From Haliotis rubra (taxonomy: Eukaryota), in NCBI RefSeq assembly GCF_003918875.1, contig NW_025767734.1, forward strand, positions 186,001 to 250,000: DNA of 64,000 nt, written 5' to 3'. Below are positions 2,693 to 43,605 of the stretch, piece after piece (positions within the stretch are counted from its first letter, which is position 1; each line of letters opens with the position of its first letter). The position numbers were made by a program, and so were the translations under genes. The notes under the pieces were generated by a model. That model was given only the letters and a program-made list of their open reading frames with translations, was not told the origin of the DNA and did not search any database.

Positions 2693-5600
2693 ATGGGGAA
2701 ACTGAACATGTTTGTAGTGTCCTTTAGCAACCTGCAAGGTGTATACTACGCAGGCCAGATCGTACAGGGCCATGTCACGGTGGAACTGACGGACACTATG
2801 AAAATGAGAGGTATTATCTTACGTATGCGAGTTTTGTAGACGTGACGCGGGAATCTGACATTTACCGTCTGGCATGTCAAACATTATTATGCATAACTCT
2901 AGAAAGTCAATACCCGTTGTTCATATATACAGTACTTTTCTGAAATCTGGAAAATCTTACTAGAAAGTCTGTAGTTTTCACTCCAATGGAGATGGTCATA
3001 ATGCGAATGCGATGCTGGCAGATATTTATTTGCAGTTGCACAACATTCGATGATTCGAAACATTTGTTGTCAGCAAGGCGTGGCACTGTGTGTACACCAA
3101 AAGTGCCGCTTCGTGATGCCATACGATACTTGATTTACAAGTTAGCATGATAATTACCGCGATCCACGAATCAAGGTTATCCACGAATTTAGGTTAAGTT
3201 ATGTTGTAATATGTTGTTGTGCAATACTGCTGATGGTTACACAACTGTCAGAGGATTCAACCTGCACTGAAAAAGGCTCCATACGAAAACTGTTTGTTGC
3301 AACGGATTCTGATTGGGTGTTCTGTAACCAGATGCCAAGAAAGATGCAAAGAAAAAATCTTATTTGTTTCACATGTATTGATGAATATGATTAACAAATG
3401 CTAAACACAACCCAAATACTAACAATTCTTTATGTTAAAACAAATGGTTGGTATTCCCAATTAGATCTCTATTTGCCTCTCTGAAAGCTGAATACAGTCA
3501 GGCCACATTAATCCGAACAGTGCCGTTTTTCATAAAAAATGTTCAGACAGTGAAACGTTCGGTTTGCTGAAAAAAGGCCAGTACACCACACTGCAGTAGA
3601 GTTACTTCCCGTTCACTTGATTGATAGAGACAAAAGAATGTATACATGTATCAACTGACTTAATTCACAAAACAACTTGGATGTGTAAATACTAAAACAT
3701 TAAAATTCATTGCACATAATAAATTCATACTGATGTAAAAAAAATGATTAAGAATAATTTTTTTGAAAGTTCCTTGAAATTGGCTCGCTGATTTCCTCAT
3801 CCTCTCTACCACGAATCACTGCAATTTTTCCTTATCCTGACTCATGCTTATTTGCTTGTCTTCTTCTTCTTTGCGAACACAGTGGAACACTTGTATCTCC
3901 CAATTGAAGTTCCCTTCAATGTAAAATCACTAATTAGTACTCACCACGAGTTATCTTTCCCCTCGCAAAGCGCGTGAACGAGGGGGCCACCTCCCACCAT
4001 GTGCCTCACTCTCTCCTTCTTCGCCCAGTGAGCAGGACGTGAGAGCGCCTTTGTCTCCCTACACACTATATCCTTTAATTATATTTAGTTTGTTACATCT
4101 TATATTCATCTATACAGGTGTAACTAGTATCCTTATTCAACATGCATTGATATTTATTCGTGTTTCTGCTGCTTTATTCACGGTTGGCCGTGTTTGCTCA
4201 GCAGTTTGCCTTAATGAAAATCTGCAGTATGTAAATTACCTTACTCTGCTGCCGATCCGCATTTAGTATGCCCTAGTTGTACAACTCCATGCTCTATTGT
4301 TTCACGCTGCAAATTATGTATTAATTTGTCTAATTCTGCCTTTGATAAATATTTATATTCCGTCTTGAGACGGGCAGCAGATAGATCTCGGAAACAATCT
4401 TCAGTCATCGCTAATAGATCAGAGTCAGATATACCCTGTCAACTGTTTGCGGACGACCCTCTATCGCTGGTGTTCCGCCTGAGTTACCTTCGCTGGAGGC
4501 GTGGGGCGCGAGTCCGCTATATCAAGAAGCGACCTGCATCCCAGGACATTCCATCATCACAGTCTAAGACTAGAAGAGCTTCCACCTCGTCACAGCGTCG
4601 CTCCGAACCCCCAGGGCTACAGCTTACGTCGAGGGAAATCCACGAAGGCTACTAAAACTTTTCTTCTGACATTCTACCTGTTTCAGAATTGTGTTTATAT
4701 GATGATGACATTCCGATTATCATTCCAGATGTGCGGCAAGAAGGCGACCAGTATCGGCTACCGTCACTTCAGCGCAGATCAACATGCAACCAGAGATGCC
4801 TACGCTGACGCCTGAGATTATAACTGAGGGTCCCGTCACTATCAGAGAGAGAGGACACCCTCAGCGCCAGCGCAGACCGGTCCCAGGCGACCTGGTCAAC
4901 CAAATCATGTTGTTGATGGAAGACCGATACGGTTTACAGAGGCCTCAGAGCAGCGGGCCCCAGAGCCCAACCCATAATAAGTCATGTAGGGCCCCAGAGC
5001 CCGCTATGACTTCGCGTGAGGACCCCAGAGCCCACAAACGCACCTCCACGAAGATGGGCAACCCAGCCCGTGATCGAAGCCTTCGCGAGGGCGTCCCAAG
5101 CAGCCTCCGCACGAAGGATCCAGATCCTCACCAGTTCTTGAAGGGCTTGCGCGGAGGAGGAAGTGCTTCACCGAGCTCAGACCCTGTAGAACACAGAGGT
5201 CATTCGCGGAGCAGGCTCCCATATAATGATTCCGGACTCTGACTCGATACCTTCCGAAGGCCATCCACGAAGGTTAAATGGCTCCAAGTCATCTTCACCC
5301 AGAAGATCTAGAAGGGATTCATCGAGAGCTTCACGAAGCCACCAGCGTTCGCCGAGGAAGTCTCCTCCAAGGTCTCCCTATACTAGCCACTTTCGTCAGT
5401 CCGTTCACCACAATCTTCCTCGTCGATCTTCCTACAGATCTAGGACTCCACCTCACTCTATTATATGTGATCCTACGTCAGAAGAGGAAGAAGGTATCGT
5501 ATTCTCAGATGCAGAAATTAGATACTGGATGGTGAATGGATTGGAACTTGCTTCCCCGTCTAAGAACGAGAACTCAGCTCATACTTATTTGATGAAGGAA

Positions 5601-8600
5601 GATGATGCGGACACTATCTCCTTACCTCCTATTGACCCGATAGCAGTGGTTCCAGCTAAGCTGGATACAGCCTTTACCAAATCTACGAAATTCCAATCAA
5701 CACATTTCCCGGTTTTCAAGGCCAAGAAATTTGCAGGTCACAATATGGACTCCTTTTTCAAGGCTCAAGAGATTGATGACAACTTTCAGTTAATCAGTGA
5801 TGCCAAGTCCAGGAATTACAGAATAGACGATCGCAAACTAGCCCAGTTGGATACCATTTCTAGGAGAATGCAGTGTTTCCGGTGAGTTTCGAATTTACCA
5901 GTCCATGGGACTGGTAAGCCTCAAATATACCAGTCCCTTATTATTTTCACCAGTCCACTTCTTTTCCATGTTAAATAAAGATAACAACAAGAATGTGTGT
6001 GTGTGTTTGTGTTTCATTTTTAATAACAACAAACGTATCAAACTCATTCGAACATGAAATGTGAAATGACGTCACATGTTACTAGTAAACCGCAAGTTTG
6101 TTTGGCAGTACTTGTACAGTTATGAACTGTTAATTACACTTTTCTTTTCTTGGTTTTACGGAATAGTTCGGATGCTCTGAACATCAACAATATCACTGTA
6201 CCCTTGCCAAGAGTATTTTCACAGTTGTAAGAAGCGATTTTATTGGATAAAGATTGGTTTCTAATGACGCTTTTTCGCCACAGTCTGCTATAAGGGTCGT
6301 CATTGGTCAAAATCAGACACGTGACCTAAGGCAGCCAATCATATTACAGCAATGGATACCGTCCTCGTAAACGAAAACTTTTAGATTTTGACAAAAGTTT
6401 TGGGTAAAATAATGCTATTCTGAACATATTAAGCAAGAAATCGCTACCTATACGTAAATTATGGAACTTATTGGACGTATCGCGCTTGGTTATGACCTGT
6501 GACAAAAATGCTTCATGTATGTATTTTTGCATTAAACATCGTGTCCGGTGAAGATTGGCGGCGAGCGAGATGTCACTTGTCAGTGACTTGACTTGCATTA
6601 CATGATGCGCGCAAAAAGATGGAAATAGTAATTTTATATGTACGTTTGACAACTTTAATGAATGCTGTTGTTGATTTTATTCATTAGTTTATTCAATTTA
6701 TTTAATAATTTCCTCGAAACATCGTTACTTTGCTCTTTGACAATGTTATTGTAGACCCGCTGCCGAAGCATGTGTCCGAGAATCGTTGTTTTCAAGAACA
6801 TTGCGAAAAATAGTTTATAATTTTAATTCTGCTGATAATATATGATAAATTGAAATTTAATAAGTGTTTTCAGACATTGTGAAATGTGATAGATTTGATA
6901 TATGAATCAAAAGTCAGGTAGGTTCCTAAAATTATGTCTCATTTTGGCGTGACTACTGCCTGGCGATTTATCGGCCTCCGGTGTCTGGGGACTCATAACG
7001 TTGTGGCGATTATTCGCCCTGCGGTGTTGAATGGGTTAATATGTCCATTCCCCATCGTAAAGTTGTCTTACTATTGGCCCGATAGAGTATTGAAATCTGA
7101 TGCATTATAACCTCACGCCAAAATGCCTCTCATCTGGATCGAGGCTAAAAGCGAGGCGATCAGCCAATGACAATAATCGCTTGGGACTGTTACTAAAAAG
7201 ACCGCGAATTCCTTACGCGTACGCTGTATGGTGCAGATCAATTTACATGGAAGTTTCCTTTATCTAACAGTTGCTGGTAATTTGTATTGCCAATTTGGAG
7301 GAAATGATTTAACCGGGTGTATTTATTGCCGGTCCCCAGGACTTGTTTGCCATAAATATGCCGGTCCTTTGATTTTTTTACCGGTAAAATACCGGCATAT
7401 GCCGGTAGACGGAAACACTGGAATGTTTTTTGGATTGAATAGATCTAGAACTGTCAATGAAACTCTCATCACCAAGTTCAAAGATTCTACAGAGGAGGAA
7501 GATAGAATGATCTACTCGGCTCTACTCATGCAGAAAAGAGACCATCAGTTCCTTACAGATCACTTGTCAGCGCTTACTGAAGCTACTACCATGGCTCGTC
7601 GTCAGGGTCTACTAGCCTCCTGCAATTGGGATAATCAATTTACGGAATCACTCTACGCTGCCCCATGGTCATCGCCCTTACTCTTTGGTGGTAACATAGA
7701 CAAGGTCTCCAAAGAGGTGTCTAAGGACTCTAGAGAGGTGCTTATGATCAAGTCCATGGATACGTTAGCGAATGTCATTAAGCAATCATCCTCAACTAGG
7801 ATGGTTAGTAAATCTACTCAAGTCGGACCTAGAACCAACGCAAGATCTGCAATTTCTAGGTATACGATTTCTAACAGGCCAGAATCGTATAGTAGTCCCG
7901 GAGGACAGATGGATCAAGATCCAACAGTTAATCCCACAAGCCTTACTCTCTCCGCTACCACTACGACAGTGGCAGATTCTATTGGGACTACTCACATCAG
8001 CTCAAGACTTGACAGTCAGAGGCAGGCTTCAATTACGTCCGTTACAAGTCCTCATCAATGCGCATCTCGAGGACCCTCTACCGTTCAGTCTACCAGATCA
8101 CGTCAAACCTCATCTACTCTGGTGGACCAAGAGATTGAATGTTTGCGTAGGCATCTCCTTAATAGAGCCGGAATCGGAAACACATCTCTACGTAGACGCG
8201 TCACTACAAGGTTGGGGAGCCCACCTCGCCTACAAGACAGCGTCAGGCCTATGGAGCAATCAAGAGAGCAAATGTCACATAAATCTGCTAGAGATGCAAG
8301 CAGTCATAAATGCCATAAGTCTCTGGAGCAACCTACTACAGAACGCTCAGTTGATGATTCACACAGACAATTCGACAGTGGCGTTTTATGTGAACAAACA
8401 AGGCTCAACAAGGTCACCGAACCTACTGTCTCTATGTTTCCGATTATTCGATCTAATCGACAATCTAAACATACATGTCAGAGCTTGCCACATTCCAGGA
8501 GCAAAGAATGTATTAGCAGACGCTCTCTCTCGGCCACACCTACCGTCGCCGACAGAATGGATGCTCCACACAGAGATATTCACTCAAATAATCATGGAAA

Positions 8601-11600
8601 TAGGATCTCCACTAGTAGACCTATTCGACACTCGATTCAACGAACAACTGACAACATTAAGGTATCACCAGTTCCAGACCCACTAGCATGGGCAGCGGGC
8701 GCACTAAGCATATCGTGGGAGGGACTCAGCGTCACGCTTTCGCCACCAGCGTTAATCCCACAAGTCTTACGGAAAATCAGTCAAACGCAGAGCCTCCATC
8801 TGATTTTGGTGGCCCTACTGGCCAGCGAGCGTGGTTTCAAATCTTATTCAAGAAATCGGACAACCAATTCTACAACTTCCAGAGCGCTCGAATCTATTGA
8901 TACATCCGCACACCAAACAAGTGCACGGAAACCAGAAGTATTCCAACTTCGCGTATGGATTGTATCAAGGCATGTCTGAATAGAGAGGTTATTCAGCCAG
9001 GCGGCAAAAGCAGTCGCAGCTTGCCCTGCGTAACTCAGCTTCATAACTTATCACGATGACAAATGGCACAGTTTTGTCAATTATGCTGCAAAGAAAGGAT
9101 TTACAGCCAGATATGCTACTCATCCTCAAGTGGCGGACTACTTATGTTATCTCACGACAAACTAAGAATCTAAAAGGCTCAACTTTGTCCACTTATCTTG
9201 CAGCATTAAGCTCTGTCATAACTATGAGAGCGGTCAAGTTAACAAAGACCCCAGAGTTACTCGCTTTGCTACGAGCATTCCGATTGGAGGATCACAAACG
9301 GAAGTTTCACGCTCCAGCTTGGGATCTAAATATAGTGCTCCAACACCTCACAAGTGAGGCTTATGAACCGTTAGAATCTACATCGTTTAAATCACTGACC
9401 CAGAAAACTTTGTCATTGTTATCGCTAGCTACAGCTGCCAGGATGTCAGAGATTCACGCTTTGGATTACGAGAGAACACGCTTTGATGATATTCATAACA
9501 TCGTTTATCTGGGACTACGCTGGGATTTTATAGCTAAGAACCAATTGCCAGGTCAACCAGACAGATTATTCCACGTCCCAGCTCTCTCATCCATACTTGG
9601 ACCTCATGATACGATGGATCTATCACTATGCCCAGTAAGAGCACTGAAAATATATCTCCACCGATCCAAACAGAGGAGAGCAAAATTCAAGAGATTATTT
9701 ATCCCTCTATCTACAGCTTCAGGACGGAAGTCTCACGTACTACTATCTCAATTTGGATCAGAACTGTCATACTACGTGCCTACAAGGCTGCAGGACTCGA
9801 CCCTCCAAGAGCATCTAATCCTCATGAAATTAGAGCGCTAGCATCAACACTTACTCTACACGGCAACTGCTCTTTGAATACCATAATGGAGGGTTGTTTC
9901 TGGAGATTCGATATGGTGTTTGCAAACCACTATCTGAGAGATATCACCACCAAGGACGTCTCAGGTATCCACCATTTAGGTCCCATGGTCCTCAAGCTCA
10001 ACAGTTGACAGTTCCTGGAGAAAGATAAGTCAATCTTACAGATTTTATACTTATCTGATATCAGTACTAAATAGCTACATGCTATATATATATTTTGCTT
10101 AAGTTCAATCTATTATCTTAAGCTCAGTACTATGGTTATTATATCATACAATATATTAGGTAACAACTCGAAGGAGTTTTGCTATTATATTTAGCTTAAG
10201 TTTCATCATATCTTAAGCTCAGTAATATGGTCAGATTTTATAAATGTATTAGCTAACAAACTTTACGGAGTTTTTGCTATTATATAGCTTAAGTTAAATT
10301 ATATCTTAAGCACAGTACTAGACTCATATAGCTTAAGTTTATGAATATCTTAAGCTTAGTACTTTGGTTACTTCATAAAAGTATATTATTGGTAACTATA
10401 AACTCAAAGGAGTTTATGCTATCACATTAACAACTTAAGTCTACTAGTCTTAAGCTTTGTATTAATGTTGTATATACTTTATCATAATAAGTATATTGTA
10501 ATAGTTATATTGTAATAACCCATATATGGCAGCTGATAAGTTAGCAGCAGGAAATCATCAGCTCAGTGCCTTTATGAAGTTCCCATAGGGTTATTACAGT
10601 CATTACAATTCAAATCACTAATTATCCAAATCCAAAGTATTATATATTCCCACCTCCATAGCCGTCGGATTCTACAAGCAAATAAACATGAGTCAGGATA
10701 AGGAAAAATATGTAATTTTCTGAGTAAAATTGATATTTTATACTTATCCTGACTCATGAGATAAGCCCTCCCGTCCTCCCCACATAACACTTTGGATTTC
10801 CCTGTAAATTCAAGTGTTGGGCTTCGCTATAAAAGGAGAGAGTGAGGCACATGGTGGTGGGAGGTGGCCCTCGTTCCCGCGCTTGCGAGGGGAAAGATAA
10901 CTGGTGGTGAGTACTAATTAGTGATTTTACATTGAAGGGAACTTCAATTGGGAGATACAAGTGTTCCACTGTGTTCGCAAAGAAGAAGAAGACAAGCAAA
11001 TATGCATGAGTCAGGATAAGTATAAAATATCAATTTTACTCAGAAAATTACATGTTTTGTCAGCACTTGCAATGTATTAATTGCCATTGAAGTTTACCAA
11101 TAATGAGCCCCGCTAATTGCCAGGGAATACAGCTGGATTAATGAAGCAAAAACAAGTACACTCAGCTAATCCTAGACTAATGCTAAGTCTCTGAATATGT
11201 ATAATTTTGATAGTAACAAACAAGCCCATTTAAATTGAAAAGGAGCCCTAGGGAGACCAGACCTGAACCGGAGGAAATCTAGACTTGCTTTATTTAGGGC
11301 TCTAGCATTGCAGAGAGAGCTTGGCATTAGGGAAAATAATGTGGTTAGGGACTGTGAGACAGACTAAGCTAATCCATTAGTGATAATTGATGTTCGGAGT
11401 CTAAAGTCCGGCAGTGAGATAAAGTCAGGTCAAATAGGTACAGTCAACCTTTGAGAAACTGCCTGAACCCGCATCTACTTAAAGGTCACATGCAACGTAA
11501 AACACAACTTTGCAGATTCTGATACCTTTCGGTATGGACTTACCGAAACAAATCATCAAAAATGCACATTCAACTTATAAAGTTGAAAAATAACGCGAAA

Positions 11601-43357: not shown

Positions 43358-43605
43358 ACCCGTGAAGGTCCAGGTTAGAATATTGATCTTCAGCAACCCA
43401 TGCTTGTCGTAAGAGGCGACTAACGGGATCGGGTGGTCAGGCTCGCTGACTTGGTTGACACATGTCATCGGTTCCCAATTGCGCAGATCGATATTCATGC
43501 TGTTGATCACTGGATTGTCTGGCCCAGACTCGATTATTTACAGACCTCCGCCATATAGCTGGAAAATTGTTGAGTGCGGCGAAAAACTAAACTCACTCAC
43601 TCACA
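43358..43605 (+). mobile_element. SINE-like retroelement family A, full length
   Basis: 14-bp TSD TTGAATAACTCGGG; (ACTC)n tail. Confidence 0.92.

What the first reader, a model, noticed from the sequence alone, without database searches (positions are those of the whole stretch)
10081..10460. Array of conserved hairpins with variable loops between the DIRS recombinase gene and the ICR
Seen: five units with GCTTAAG-loop-CTTAAGC at 10097-10123, 10194-10218, 10287-10311, 10331-10355 and ~10433-10455. The stems are nearly invariant (the fifth starts ACTTAAG) but the loops all differ: TTCAATCTATTAT, TTTCATCATAT, TTAAATTATAT, TTTATGAATAT, TCTACTAGT. The first four are followed by a CAGTA-like word. 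The three long units add a weak GTTA..TAAC helix and a tetraloop hairpin (AACTC-GAAG-GAGTT, AAACTT-TACG-GAGTTT, AAACTC-AAAG-GAGTTT) before GCTAT. Conserved stems with free loops are not what neutral decay of a tandem repeat gives. Inference: a selected repeated RNA/ssDNA structure, such as packaging or Gag-binding sites, a processed small-RNA array, or inverted binding sites for the tyrosine recombinase. I do not know of this being a described part of DIRS architecture.
Basis: partly seen in the sequence, partly recalled or inferred. Interest (0 to 1): 0.75.

Follow-up and report, generated by a model that had tools for sequence, protein, structure and literature searches.

The report
Selected hairpin repeat in DIRS retrotransposon tail
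A 93-base repeat carrying a conserved GCTTAAG/CTTAAGC stem-loop sits in the non-coding tail of a mollusc DIRS retrotransposon, is kept by selection, and grows to 12-18 units in parasitic copies that have lost their enzymes, so it is probably a signal the element's machinery recognises.

Summary
Window 10089-10460 is a ~93-nt tandem repeat with five GCTTAAG-loop-CTTAAGC pairs, lying between the tyrosine-recombinase gene and the ICR of a defective DIRS1-like element (about 3824-11058).

It is not a secondary insertion. All same-family copies carry it, and subfamilies with only 70-79% recombinase identity carry one to five units at the same place. The genome holds 7150 perfect pairs against 17 for a control pattern.

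In 29 copies, variants shared between copies are about 7-fold depleted in the arms, as in the essential ICR. Private variants are not depleted.

The longest arrays (12-18 units) lie in a young, prolific family of non-autonomous deletion derivatives. These kept the ITRs, the ICR and the array while their coding sequence decayed.

Best reading (0.45): a cis-acting stem-loop on the sense RNA, bound by a protein supplied in trans and multiplied for avidity. A DNA-level site is not excluded. Evidence for pairing is modest, because the arm sequence itself is nearly invariant.

The neighbouring tetraloop hairpin and the GTTA..TAAC helix are weakly supported or unsupported. A small-RNA role is unlikely.

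Earlier notes of this scan flagged the same module on other DNA of this genome (s1-339670, s1-344958, s1-325332).

The parts
3824..4018 (.). Left inverted terminal repeat (ITR-L) of the DIRS1-like element
   Evidence: Inverted repeats 3825-3968 / 10883-11026 (97%) and 3987-4018 / 10833-10864. Its first 36 nt are complementary to ICR 10674-10709.
5478..7599 (+). Gag-like ORF1b remnant split by a ~1.55-kb insertion (5871-7422)
   Evidence: tblastn of the L071 ORF1b: aa 2-132 map to 5478-5870 and aa 132-190 to 7423-7599.
7772..8686 (+). C-terminal reverse transcriptase plus RNase H ORF; the first ~142 aa of RT are missing
   Evidence: Pfam RT_RNaseH, E=2.3e-8. The tblastn match to the L071 RT-RH ORF starts at aa 143.
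9056..10008 (+). Tyrosine recombinase gene, broken by a frameshift (ORFs 9056-9841 and 9628-10008)
   Evidence: ORF list. Homologues at 68-73% identity in Haliotis, some carrying PF00589. The equivalent region of L071 hits Phage_int_SAM_1 and Phage_integrase weakly.
10062..10068 (+). CAGTACT word upstream of unit 1; the same word follows each hairpin and so marks the repeat phase
   Evidence: Read from the sequence. Single-unit subfamilies have CCAGTA on both sides of the unit.
10089..10460 (+). Tandem array of the ~93-nt 3'UTR module: three long units, one first unit without the small hairpin, one 44-nt truncated unit
   Evidence: TRF period 93; direct-repeat families D1-D3.
10097..10123 (+). 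Stem-loop B, unit 1 (7-bp stem, 13-nt loop)
   Evidence: RNA MFE -6.7 kcal/mol.
10194..10218 (+). Stem-loop B, unit 2 (8 bp with the flanking A-T pair, 11-nt loop)
   Evidence: MFE -7.3.
10287..10311 (+). Stem-loop B, unit 3
   Evidence: MFE -7.3.
10331..10355 (+). Stem-loop B, unit 4 (the 44-nt short unit)
   Evidence: MFE -7.3.
10433..10455 (+). Stem-loop B, unit 5 (ACTTAAG arm, outer pair lost, 9-nt loop)
   Evidence: MFE -5.2.
10165..10178 (+). Small hairpin A (AACTC-GAAG-GAGTT); further copies at 10258-10273 and 10400-10415
   Evidence: In 7 of 7 single-unit subfamily loci it reads C-UACG-G. It is not constrained within this family.
10471..10673 (+). Distal 3'UTR blocks conserved across subfamilies, partly complementary to the right ITR
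   Evidence: Cross-subfamily comparison. Inverted repeats 10612-10624 / 10915-10927 and 10628-10643 / 10784-10799.
10674..10758 (.). Internal complementary region (ICR)
   Evidence: Complementary to the start of ITR-L (I3) and the end of ITR-R (I2). Shared variants are depleted, as in the arms.
10833..11058 (.). Right inverted terminal repeat (ITR-R)
   Evidence: pairs I1, I2 and I4.

Best explanation
The array is a tandem multiplication of a cis-acting module that belongs to the 3' untranslated region of one clade of gastropod (abalone-like) DIRS1 retrotransposons.

The core of the module is a short stem-loop: GCUUAAG, a loop of 6-13 nt, then CUUAAGC. A small hairpin lies upstream of it (C-UACG-G in single-unit elements) and a CAGUACU word follows it.

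I propose that it acts on the sense-strand element RNA. The stem, whose sequence as well as pairing is conserved, would be bound by a protein supplied in trans, most likely the element's Gag-like protein or its RT. Binding would mark the RNA as a template for packaging and reverse transcription.

More units would give more binding, which would explain why enzyme-less derivatives that depend on trans-mobilisation carry 12-18 units while enzyme-coding elements carry 1-5.

The array probably arose by template slippage between the CCAGUA words that flank a single unit.

Shown: the repeat exists, its position is ancestral, the arms are under selection, and it is retained and expanded in non-autonomous copies.

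Inferred: RNA-level action, the identity of the binding partner, and the step of the life cycle involved.
For: 1. It is an ancestral part of the element.
- All 30 same-family loci carry it.
- 15 of 20 loci from subfamilies with 70-79% recombinase identity have a CTTAAG pair at the same offset after the recombinase stop.

2. Abundance. There are 7150 perfect pairs per strand genome-wide against 17 for the reversed-pattern control.

3. Selection in the replicating lineage, from 29 aligned copies.
- Arms (70 sites): 13 private variants, 1 shared variant.
- Other non-coding sequence (549 sites): 81 private, 53 shared. Fisher p about 0.02.
- The ICR, experimentally essential in DIRS-1 (PMC7192593), shows the same pattern: 10 private, 2 shared on 85 sites.
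- Private variants are not depleted in the arms, so the arms are not a mutational cold spot.

4. Conservation among units.
- Across 60 units the arms have 0.95 pairwise identity, against 0.58 for loops and 0.68 for the rest.
- With units chosen by an arm-independent anchor: 0.955 against 0.75-0.78.

5. Non-autonomous derivatives.
- Elements with 12-18 units lack L071 positions 5498-6961 and 7053-7276, with identical breakpoints in two lineages, and carry only scattered short ORFs (none of 80 aa or more in L058; the longest in L061 is 111 aa).
- A junction-spanning query gave 40 of 40 scored hits at full length and 97-100% identity, from 2549 candidates.
- A 7-unit element (L059) has only the smaller deletion.

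6. Stem-loop rather than fixed dyad site.
- Loop length varies from 6 to 13 nt.
- The flanking G and C are in inverted, not direct, arrangement.
- 92.7% of cells are paired, against 22-61% when partners are slid.
- The inner six pairs show 8 G.U cells and 0 A.C cells, plus one G-C to A-U double change.
- Genome-wide, inner C>T (gives G.U) is 533 raw against inner G>A (gives A.C) 215 raw.
- Single hairpins fold at a mean of -7.1 kcal/mol.

7. DIRS-1 RT acts in trans (PMC7192593).
Against: - The arm sequence is essentially the same in all subfamilies, so true covariation is slight: 4 double changes and a covariation score of 0.054 against 0.047 for shuffles.
- There is no wobble asymmetry at the A-U pairs: 96 A>G against 90 T>C, raw.
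- A breaking variant is fixed in one 4-unit subfamily (GCTTAAA..CTTAAGC in L080, L082, L083, L086).
- One unit changed both arms in parallel, not in a compensating way (CTAAAG twice; L060, L061).
- In several single-unit subfamilies the stem is only 6 bp, folding at -2.8 to -5.2 kcal/mol.
- RNAalifold gives only -3.1 kcal/mol for the consensus.
- Folding z-scores are equal on the two strands (-4.5 and -4.3).
- The small hairpin shows no constraint within the family and no sense-strand wobble bias.
- Some units of long arrays have lost an arm.
- The variant counts are counts of copies, not of independent events.
- No expression or binding data exist.
- No orthologous array could be fetched from another species.
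Confidence: 0.45

Rival explanations
1. DNA-level site. The CTTAAG pairs are accessory binding sites for the element's tyrosine recombinase (or another element protein). They would act on the double-stranded circle or on hairpins folded in the single-stranded minus-strand cDNA, next to the ICR, and help circle completion or integration.
For: - The sequence, rather than only the pairing, is conserved, and each arm holds a palindromic hexamer, as expected for a dimeric DNA binder.
- The array lies 200-600 nt upstream of the ICR.
- DIRS-1 cDNA intermediates are single-stranded (PMC7192593).
- ssDNA folding has z = -6.3.
- Non-autonomous copies would need such sites just as much.
- There is no wobble bias at the A-U pairs.
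Against: - Spacing between half-sites varies from 6 to 13 nt, unlike the fixed 6-8 bp spacers of crossover cores.
- CTTAAG occurs nowhere else in the element, so it does not resemble the ITR ends that form the circle junction.
- Variants in the inner stem favour G.U on the sense strand, which would be C.A mismatches in minus-strand DNA.
Confidence: 0.2
2. Host-factor RNA element. The stem-loops recruit a host RNA-binding protein for nuclear export, stability or translation of the unspliced element RNA, in the manner of a constitutive transport element, with an additive effect of copy number.
For: - It sits in the 3'UTR of the sense transcript.
- It is multiplied independently in several subfamilies.
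- The sequence-specific stem is conserved.
- From my own knowledge: multiple CTE copies act additively in retroviral vectors.
Against: - No match to any Rfam family.
- Nothing ties the motif to a known host factor.
- An export or stability role does not by itself explain why the largest arrays are in derivatives that compete for trans-acting element proteins.
Confidence: 0.15
3. No function. The array is a minisatellite produced by slippage in an AT-rich UTR. The arms look conserved because copies are young, because microhomology at CTTAAG/CAGTA drives repeat turnover, or because units were picked by their arms.
For: - Unit number is very variable, from 1 to 18.
- Flanking CCAGTA direct repeats could seed slippage.
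- Some units have lost an arm without apparent harm.
- TE-internal tandem repeats are common (PMC7004042).
- My first unit set was chosen by its arms.
Against: - The alignment-based test has no such selection bias and shows depletion of shared variants only, matching the ICR.
- Anchor-independent units still show arms at 0.955 identity.
- Single-unit subfamilies, which have no array dynamics, keep the pair at 70-79% protein identity.
- In non-autonomous lineages the coding sequence decayed until only scattered short ORFs were left (none of 80 aa or more in L058), while the arms stayed intact.
Confidence: 0.12
4. Small-RNA source. The hairpins are processed into miRNA- or siRNA-like small RNAs, or seed piRNA production.
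For: It is a repeated hairpin array in a transposon transcript, and inter-unit pairing of the self-complementary arms can build longer duplexes.
Against: - Individual stems are 6-8 bp, far below Dicer or Drosha substrates.
- The only weak miRNA-model hits lie on the ICR, not on the array, and are far below threshold.
Confidence: 0.03

Closest known systems
3' stem-loop of stringent-type LINEs, shared with their partner SINEs (UnaL2/UnaSINE1; Kajikawa and Okada 2002, from my own knowledge)
   Same: A short conserved stem-loop in the 3' non-coding tail of a retroelement. It is kept by non-autonomous parasites because the partner's machinery recognises it.
   Different: In LINEs it sits at the very 3' end and is the RT start site. 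Here it lies 0.6-1 kb upstream of the RNA 3' end, before the ICR and ITR-R, so it cannot be the cDNA start. It is also tandemly multiplied, and its recognition is untested.
Retroviral cis-acting RNA elements: RSV direct repeats, the MPMV constitutive transport element, and the MoMLV packaging/dimerisation region with palindromic stems and tetraloop hairpins (from my own knowledge)
   Same: Structured, repeated elements in non-coding RNA that act after transcription. Their effect grows with copy number, and palindromic stems occur next to tetraloop hairpins.
   Different: No sequence or Rfam relation. The host is a YR retrotransposon of a mollusc, the stems are much shorter, and no binding partner is known.
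Tandem repeats in the 3'UTR of plant Ty3/gypsy Ogre/Tat elements, which seed satellites (PMC7004042)
   Same: A hypervariable tandem array between the last ORF and the terminal repeat of a retrotransposon, with copy number differing between subfamilies.
   Different: Those arrays are treated as neutral by-products. Here a 14-nt core is under purifying selection, and the array is largest in trans-dependent derivatives.
DIRS-1 cis signals: the ICR, and the 3'-terminal hairpin noted by Poulter and Goodwin (cited in PMC7192593)
   Same: The same kind of element and the same 3' region. The ICR shows the same selection signature in my test.
   Different: The array has no complementarity to the termini, is not at the RNA 3' end, and is absent from other DIRS clades, including other Haliotis subfamilies.
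Folded single-strand recombination sites of tyrosine recombinases (integron attC, CTX phage attP; from my own knowledge)
   Same: An imperfect inverted repeat with a variable central part, in a system that has a tyrosine recombinase and single-stranded DNA intermediates.
   Different: attC recognition depends on extrahelical bases and structure, not on stem sequence. Here the stem sequence is fixed, the site is not at the recombination junction, and nothing has been tested.

Membership tests
DIRS1-like retrotransposon (context of the array) | Inverted terminal repeats | tested here: met
   3825-3968 / 10883-11026 at 97%, and 3987-4018 / 10833-10864. The same in L071.
DIRS1-like retrotransposon (context of the array) | Internal complementary region matching the start of the left ITR and the end of the right ITR | tested here: met
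   10674-10709 is complementary to 3824-3859, and 10705-10758 to 11005-11058.
DIRS1-like retrotransposon (context of the array) | Encodes RT/RNase H and a tyrosine recombinase | tested here: met
   Window: RNase H, E=2.3e-8. L071: RVT_1 E=3e-17 plus RNase H. The recombinase hits Phage_int_SAM_1 and Phage_integrase only below Pfam cut-offs, but some homologues carry PF00589.
Tandem repeat / minisatellite | Head-to-tail copies of one unit | tested here: met
   TRF period 93, 2.4 copies, 81% matches. Arrays of up to 18 units occur elsewhere.
Conserved structured RNA (stem-loop B) | Pairing kept across homologues | tested here: met
   92.7% of 766 cells are paired, against 22-61% with slid partners. 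The structure was read from these same sequences, which favours it.
Conserved structured RNA (stem-loop B) | Compensatory (covarying) changes | tested here: inconclusive
   4 pairs show a double change (2 of 500 shuffles reach this). Covariation score is 0.054 against 0.047. Most pairs never vary.
Conserved structured RNA (stem-loop B) | Strand-specific wobble tolerance | tested here: inconclusive
   Inner pairs have G.U 8 against A.C 0, and inner C>T is 533 against G>A 215 raw. But A>G is 96 against T>C 90, and an A.C variant is fixed in one subfamily.
Any Rfam family | Covariance-model match | tested here: not met
   No hit on the array at E up to 1. There are two sub-threshold miRNA-model hits on the ICR only. 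No tRNA.
Tyrosine-recombinase crossover core site (loxP/FRT/att core type) | Inverted binding elements around a fixed 6-8 bp spacer, located at the recombining junction | tested here: not met
   The spacer is 6-13 nt, mostly 9-13. The array is not at the ITR junction or ICR centre, and the ITR ends contain no CTTAAG.
miRNA / siRNA precursor hairpin | Stem of about 20 bp or more | tested here: not met
   Stems are 6-8 bp.
UNCG tetraloop hairpin (small hairpin A) | C(UNCG)G loop closed by a conserved helix | tested here: inconclusive
   C-UACG-G in 7 of 7 single-unit loci but in only 10 of 51 hairpins overall. The fifth pair is often broken, and there is no deficit of shared variants.
DAM-type methyltransferase target (considered) | The element encodes a DAM-like domain that could read a palindromic A-containing site | tested here: not met
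   No methyltransferase family hit in the L071 ORFs at E up to 0.01. The target motif of DIRS DAM domains is unknown (bioRxiv 10.64898/2026.05.21.726589).

The most novel reading that the evidence does not exclude
The hairpins fold in the single-stranded minus-strand cDNA, which is the known DIRS intermediate. There they would be read by the element's tyrosine recombinase, or would prime second-strand synthesis, in the way integron attC sites or ssDNA-phage origins work. The array would then be the first recognised protein-DNA handle of the DIRS cycle besides the ITRs and the ICR. Non-autonomous parasites would compete by multiplying it.
Probability: 0.1. Interest if true: 0.85.

Novelty: new variant of a known kind. 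Interest (0 to 1): 0.6.

Why it matters
The DIRS replication cycle is poorly known. The RT primer, the packaging signal and the recombinase's binding sites are all undefined, and only the ICR has been shown to be essential (PMC7192593).

A short, sequence-defined stem-loop shows the same selection signature as the ICR and is multiplied in a young, prolific family of enzyme-less derivatives. That makes it a concrete candidate for the signal by which DIRS proteins choose their template. It also gives specific binding and deletion experiments to run.

It is also a clear example of a parasite of a parasite that keeps and amplifies only cis-signals.

Tried and rejected
- Rfam and tRNA scans of 9900-11100 gave nothing on the array.
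- Folding z-scores do not separate the strands: -4.5 and -4.3 for RNA, -6.3 for minus-strand DNA.
- The genome-wide test for wobble asymmetry at A-U pairs was null: 96 against 90 raw. With the outer pair included, G>A (ACTTAAG) is as common as C>T.
- The GTTA..TAAC helix is not conserved: 85 of 254 spacers.
- Small hairpin A shows no deficit of shared variants (8 private, 6 shared on 34 sites) and no sense-strand wobble bias.
- Cross-species comparison failed. The seven loci fetched through Haliotis asinina, H. cracherodii and metagenome proteins belong to other DIRS subfamilies. They lack the CTTAAG module, though they share the ICR core.
- The methyltransferase-target idea has no support: no such domain was detected.
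- A global alignment of long arrays was unusable because unit numbers differ.
The shared-versus-private test therefore rests on 29 copies.
- My first unit alignment (A1) chose units by their arms. I repeated the comparison with an arm-independent anchor.
- The parallel single-A insertions in both arms of one L060 unit may be homopolymer errors of the assembly, and I did not count them.
Full report
**What is there.**
Window 10089-10460 is a tandem repeat with a period of about 93 nt (TRF; direct-repeat families). The pattern has 9 matches in the window against none in 100 shuffles. Ten of the window's fifteen CTTAAG hexamers lie in this stretch.

The CAGTA-like word after units 1-4 and the three small hairpins (10165-10178, 10258-10273, 10400-10415) are also as described. 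The GTTA..TAAC helix exists in two of the three long units. Each arm contains the palindrome CTTAAG, so only the flanking G and C make the pair inverted rather than direct.

**Context.**
The surrounding element is a DIRS1-like retrotransposon, about 3824-11058. Its inverted terminal repeats are at 3824-4018 and 10833-11058. The internal complementary region at 10674-10758 matches the start of the left ITR and the end of the right ITR.

The copy is defective:
- The gag-like ORF is split by a 1.55-kb insertion.
- The first ~142 residues of RT are missing.
- RNase H is recognisable.
- The recombinase gene carries a frameshift.

A related copy used as an architectural reference (L071) has RVT_1 plus RNase H and a recombinase region with weak phage-integrase hits. 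These are followed by two units, the ICR and the right ITR.

The nearest recombinase proteins in the database are from Haliotis asinina and H. cracherodii, at 68-73% identity. The host is therefore an abalone-like gastropod. The genome size (1.378 Gb in 2855 contigs) fits my recollection of a Haliotis assembly, but I did not verify that.

**Is it part of the element?**
Yes. All 30 same-family loci carry the array, one of them with 11 units.

I fetched 20 loci by recombinase similarity of only 70-79%, without regard to the motif. Fifteen have a CTTAAG pair at the same offset after the stop codon. Most have a single unit made of the small hairpin (AACTC-TACG-GAGTT), GCTAT, the CTTAAG pair and CCAGTACT. 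Five belong to a clade without the pair.

Genome-wide there are 7150 perfect pairs per strand, against 17 for the reversed-pattern control. Unit number ranges from 1 to 18. Single units are flanked by CCAGTA on both sides, a plausible seed for slippage.

**Is it selected?**
I aligned 29 same-family copies over 1.4 kb. I separated variants seen in one copy (decay after insertion) from variants shared by two or more copies (changes in replicating lineages).

| Region | Sites | Private variants | Shared variants |
|---|---|---|---|
| Arms of the stem-loop | 70 | 13 | 1 |
| Other non-coding sequence | 549 | 81 | 53 |
| ICR | 85 | 10 | 2 |

The arms against other non-coding sequence give Fisher p = 0.018-0.022. 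The ICR, shown to be essential in DIRS-1 (PMC7192593), behaves in the same way. Private variants are as frequent in the arms as elsewhere, so the arms are not a mutational cold spot.

Among 60 units from many subfamilies, the arms have 0.95 pairwise identity, against 0.58 for loops and 0.68 for the rest. Because those units were chosen by their arms, I repeated the comparison with an arm-independent anchor on 115 units. Arms were 0.955 identical against 0.75-0.78 elsewhere, and 76 units were perfect. A few units in long arrays have lost an arm.

The small hairpin shows no deficit of shared variants within the family.

**The strongest new evidence.**

- L058 and L061, from two lineages about 89% alike, both lack L071 5498-6961 (most of RT and RNase H) and 7053-7276 (inside the recombinase), with the same breakpoints.
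- They have only scattered short ORFs: none of 80 aa or more in L058, and the longest in L061 is 111 aa.
- Their protein remnants are 35-60% identical to the reference.
- They carry 12-18 units followed by an intact ICR and right ITR.
- L059, with 7 units, has only the smaller deletion.
- A query spanning both deletion junctions gave 40 of 40 scored hits over its full length at 97-100% identity, from 2549 first-look candidates.

This is a young, prolific family that must be mobilised in trans. It kept, and multiplied, exactly the array, the ICR and the ITRs while its coding sequence decayed.

**Structure or sequence, RNA or DNA?**
For a stem-loop:
- Loop length varies from 6 to 13 nt.
- The flanks are in inverted arrangement.
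- 92.7% of cells are paired, against 22-61% when partners are slid.
- There are 4 double changes (reached by 2 of 500 shuffles).
- In the inner six pairs there are 8 G.U cells, no A.C cells, and one G-C to A-U change.
- Genome-wide, inner C>T (gives G.U on the sense strand) is 533 raw against inner G>A 215 raw.
- A C-UACG-G hairpin lies on the sense strand in all seven single-unit loci.
- Single hairpins fold at a mean of -7.1 kcal/mol.

Against:
- The arm sequence hardly ever changes.
- A>G and T>C are equal, at 96 and 90 raw.
- An A.C variant is fixed in a 4-unit subfamily.
- One unit changed both arms in parallel.
- Some single-unit stems are only 6 bp.
- The RNAalifold consensus is only -3.1 kcal/mol.
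- Both strands fold equally well.

I conclude that the conserved object is a short stem-loop, or dyad, whose sequence is itself recognised. The evidence leans moderately towards the sense RNA.

**Mechanism.**
The array cannot be the cDNA start site, because the ICR and right ITR lie downstream of it and must be copied. It is unlikely to be the recombinase crossover site: the spacer is variable, it is not at the junction, and it does not resemble the ITR ends.

My best reading is a binding site for a trans-acting protein that selects the RNA for packaging or reverse transcription, multiplied for avidity. This is consistent with RT acting in trans in DIRS-1 (PMC7192593). Rivals are an accessory DNA site for the recombinase, a host-factor export or stability element, and a neutral minisatellite. 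A small-RNA role is very unlikely.

**Literature and novelty.**
I found no mention of a hairpin or tandem array between the recombinase gene and the ICR in the papers I read:
- the DIRS overview (PMC3266345);
- the Xenopus DIRS study (PMC9210276);
- the DIRS-1 mechanism paper (PMC7192593).

Rfam has nothing. Earlier notes of this scan on other windows of this genome describe the same kind of module (s1-339670, s1-344958) and non-autonomous DIRS copies with a hairpin array (s1-325332, s1-347358). My tests agree with them.

I rate this a new variant of a known kind: a cis-acting repeated stem-loop in a retroelement's 3' tail.

Noticed in passing
window 5871-7422: A ~1.55-kb insertion splits the gag-like ORF of this DIRS copy. 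ORF1b residues 2-132 lie before it and 132-190 after it. Its nature was not examined.
   Followed up: no
L051-L057 (Haliotis asinina and H. cracherodii loci) and L031-L050: The ICR core, an inverted CATGAGTCAGGATAAG..CTTATCCTGACTCATG around an AT-rich centre, is almost identical across DIRS subfamilies and across abalone species, although their 3'UTRs are otherwise unalignable.
   Followed up: partly
L048:1181-1400: One divergent copy carries a second set of three units in the opposite orientation just after its first unit. This is an inverted duplication or a nested insertion.
   Followed up: no
L060:3150-3200: One unit has an extra A in both arms (CTTAAAG twice) that the sister copy L061 lacks. 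These may be homopolymer-length errors of the assembly rather than mutations.
   Followed up: no
L033, L034, L038, L039, L042 (about 950-1100 in oriented coordinates): A sister DIRS clade lacks the CTTAAG pair but keeps CCCAGTACTTGTAAG at the same place, followed by a GCTTCTCCA..TGGAG inverted repeat. In L042 the sequence GTAAGCTTAC forms a 10-nt palindrome.
   Followed up: no
window 43358-43432: Another note of the scan on this window flags a SINE-like family with a structured 5' end (s1-349508). It is unrelated to this finding and I did not examine it.
   Followed up: no
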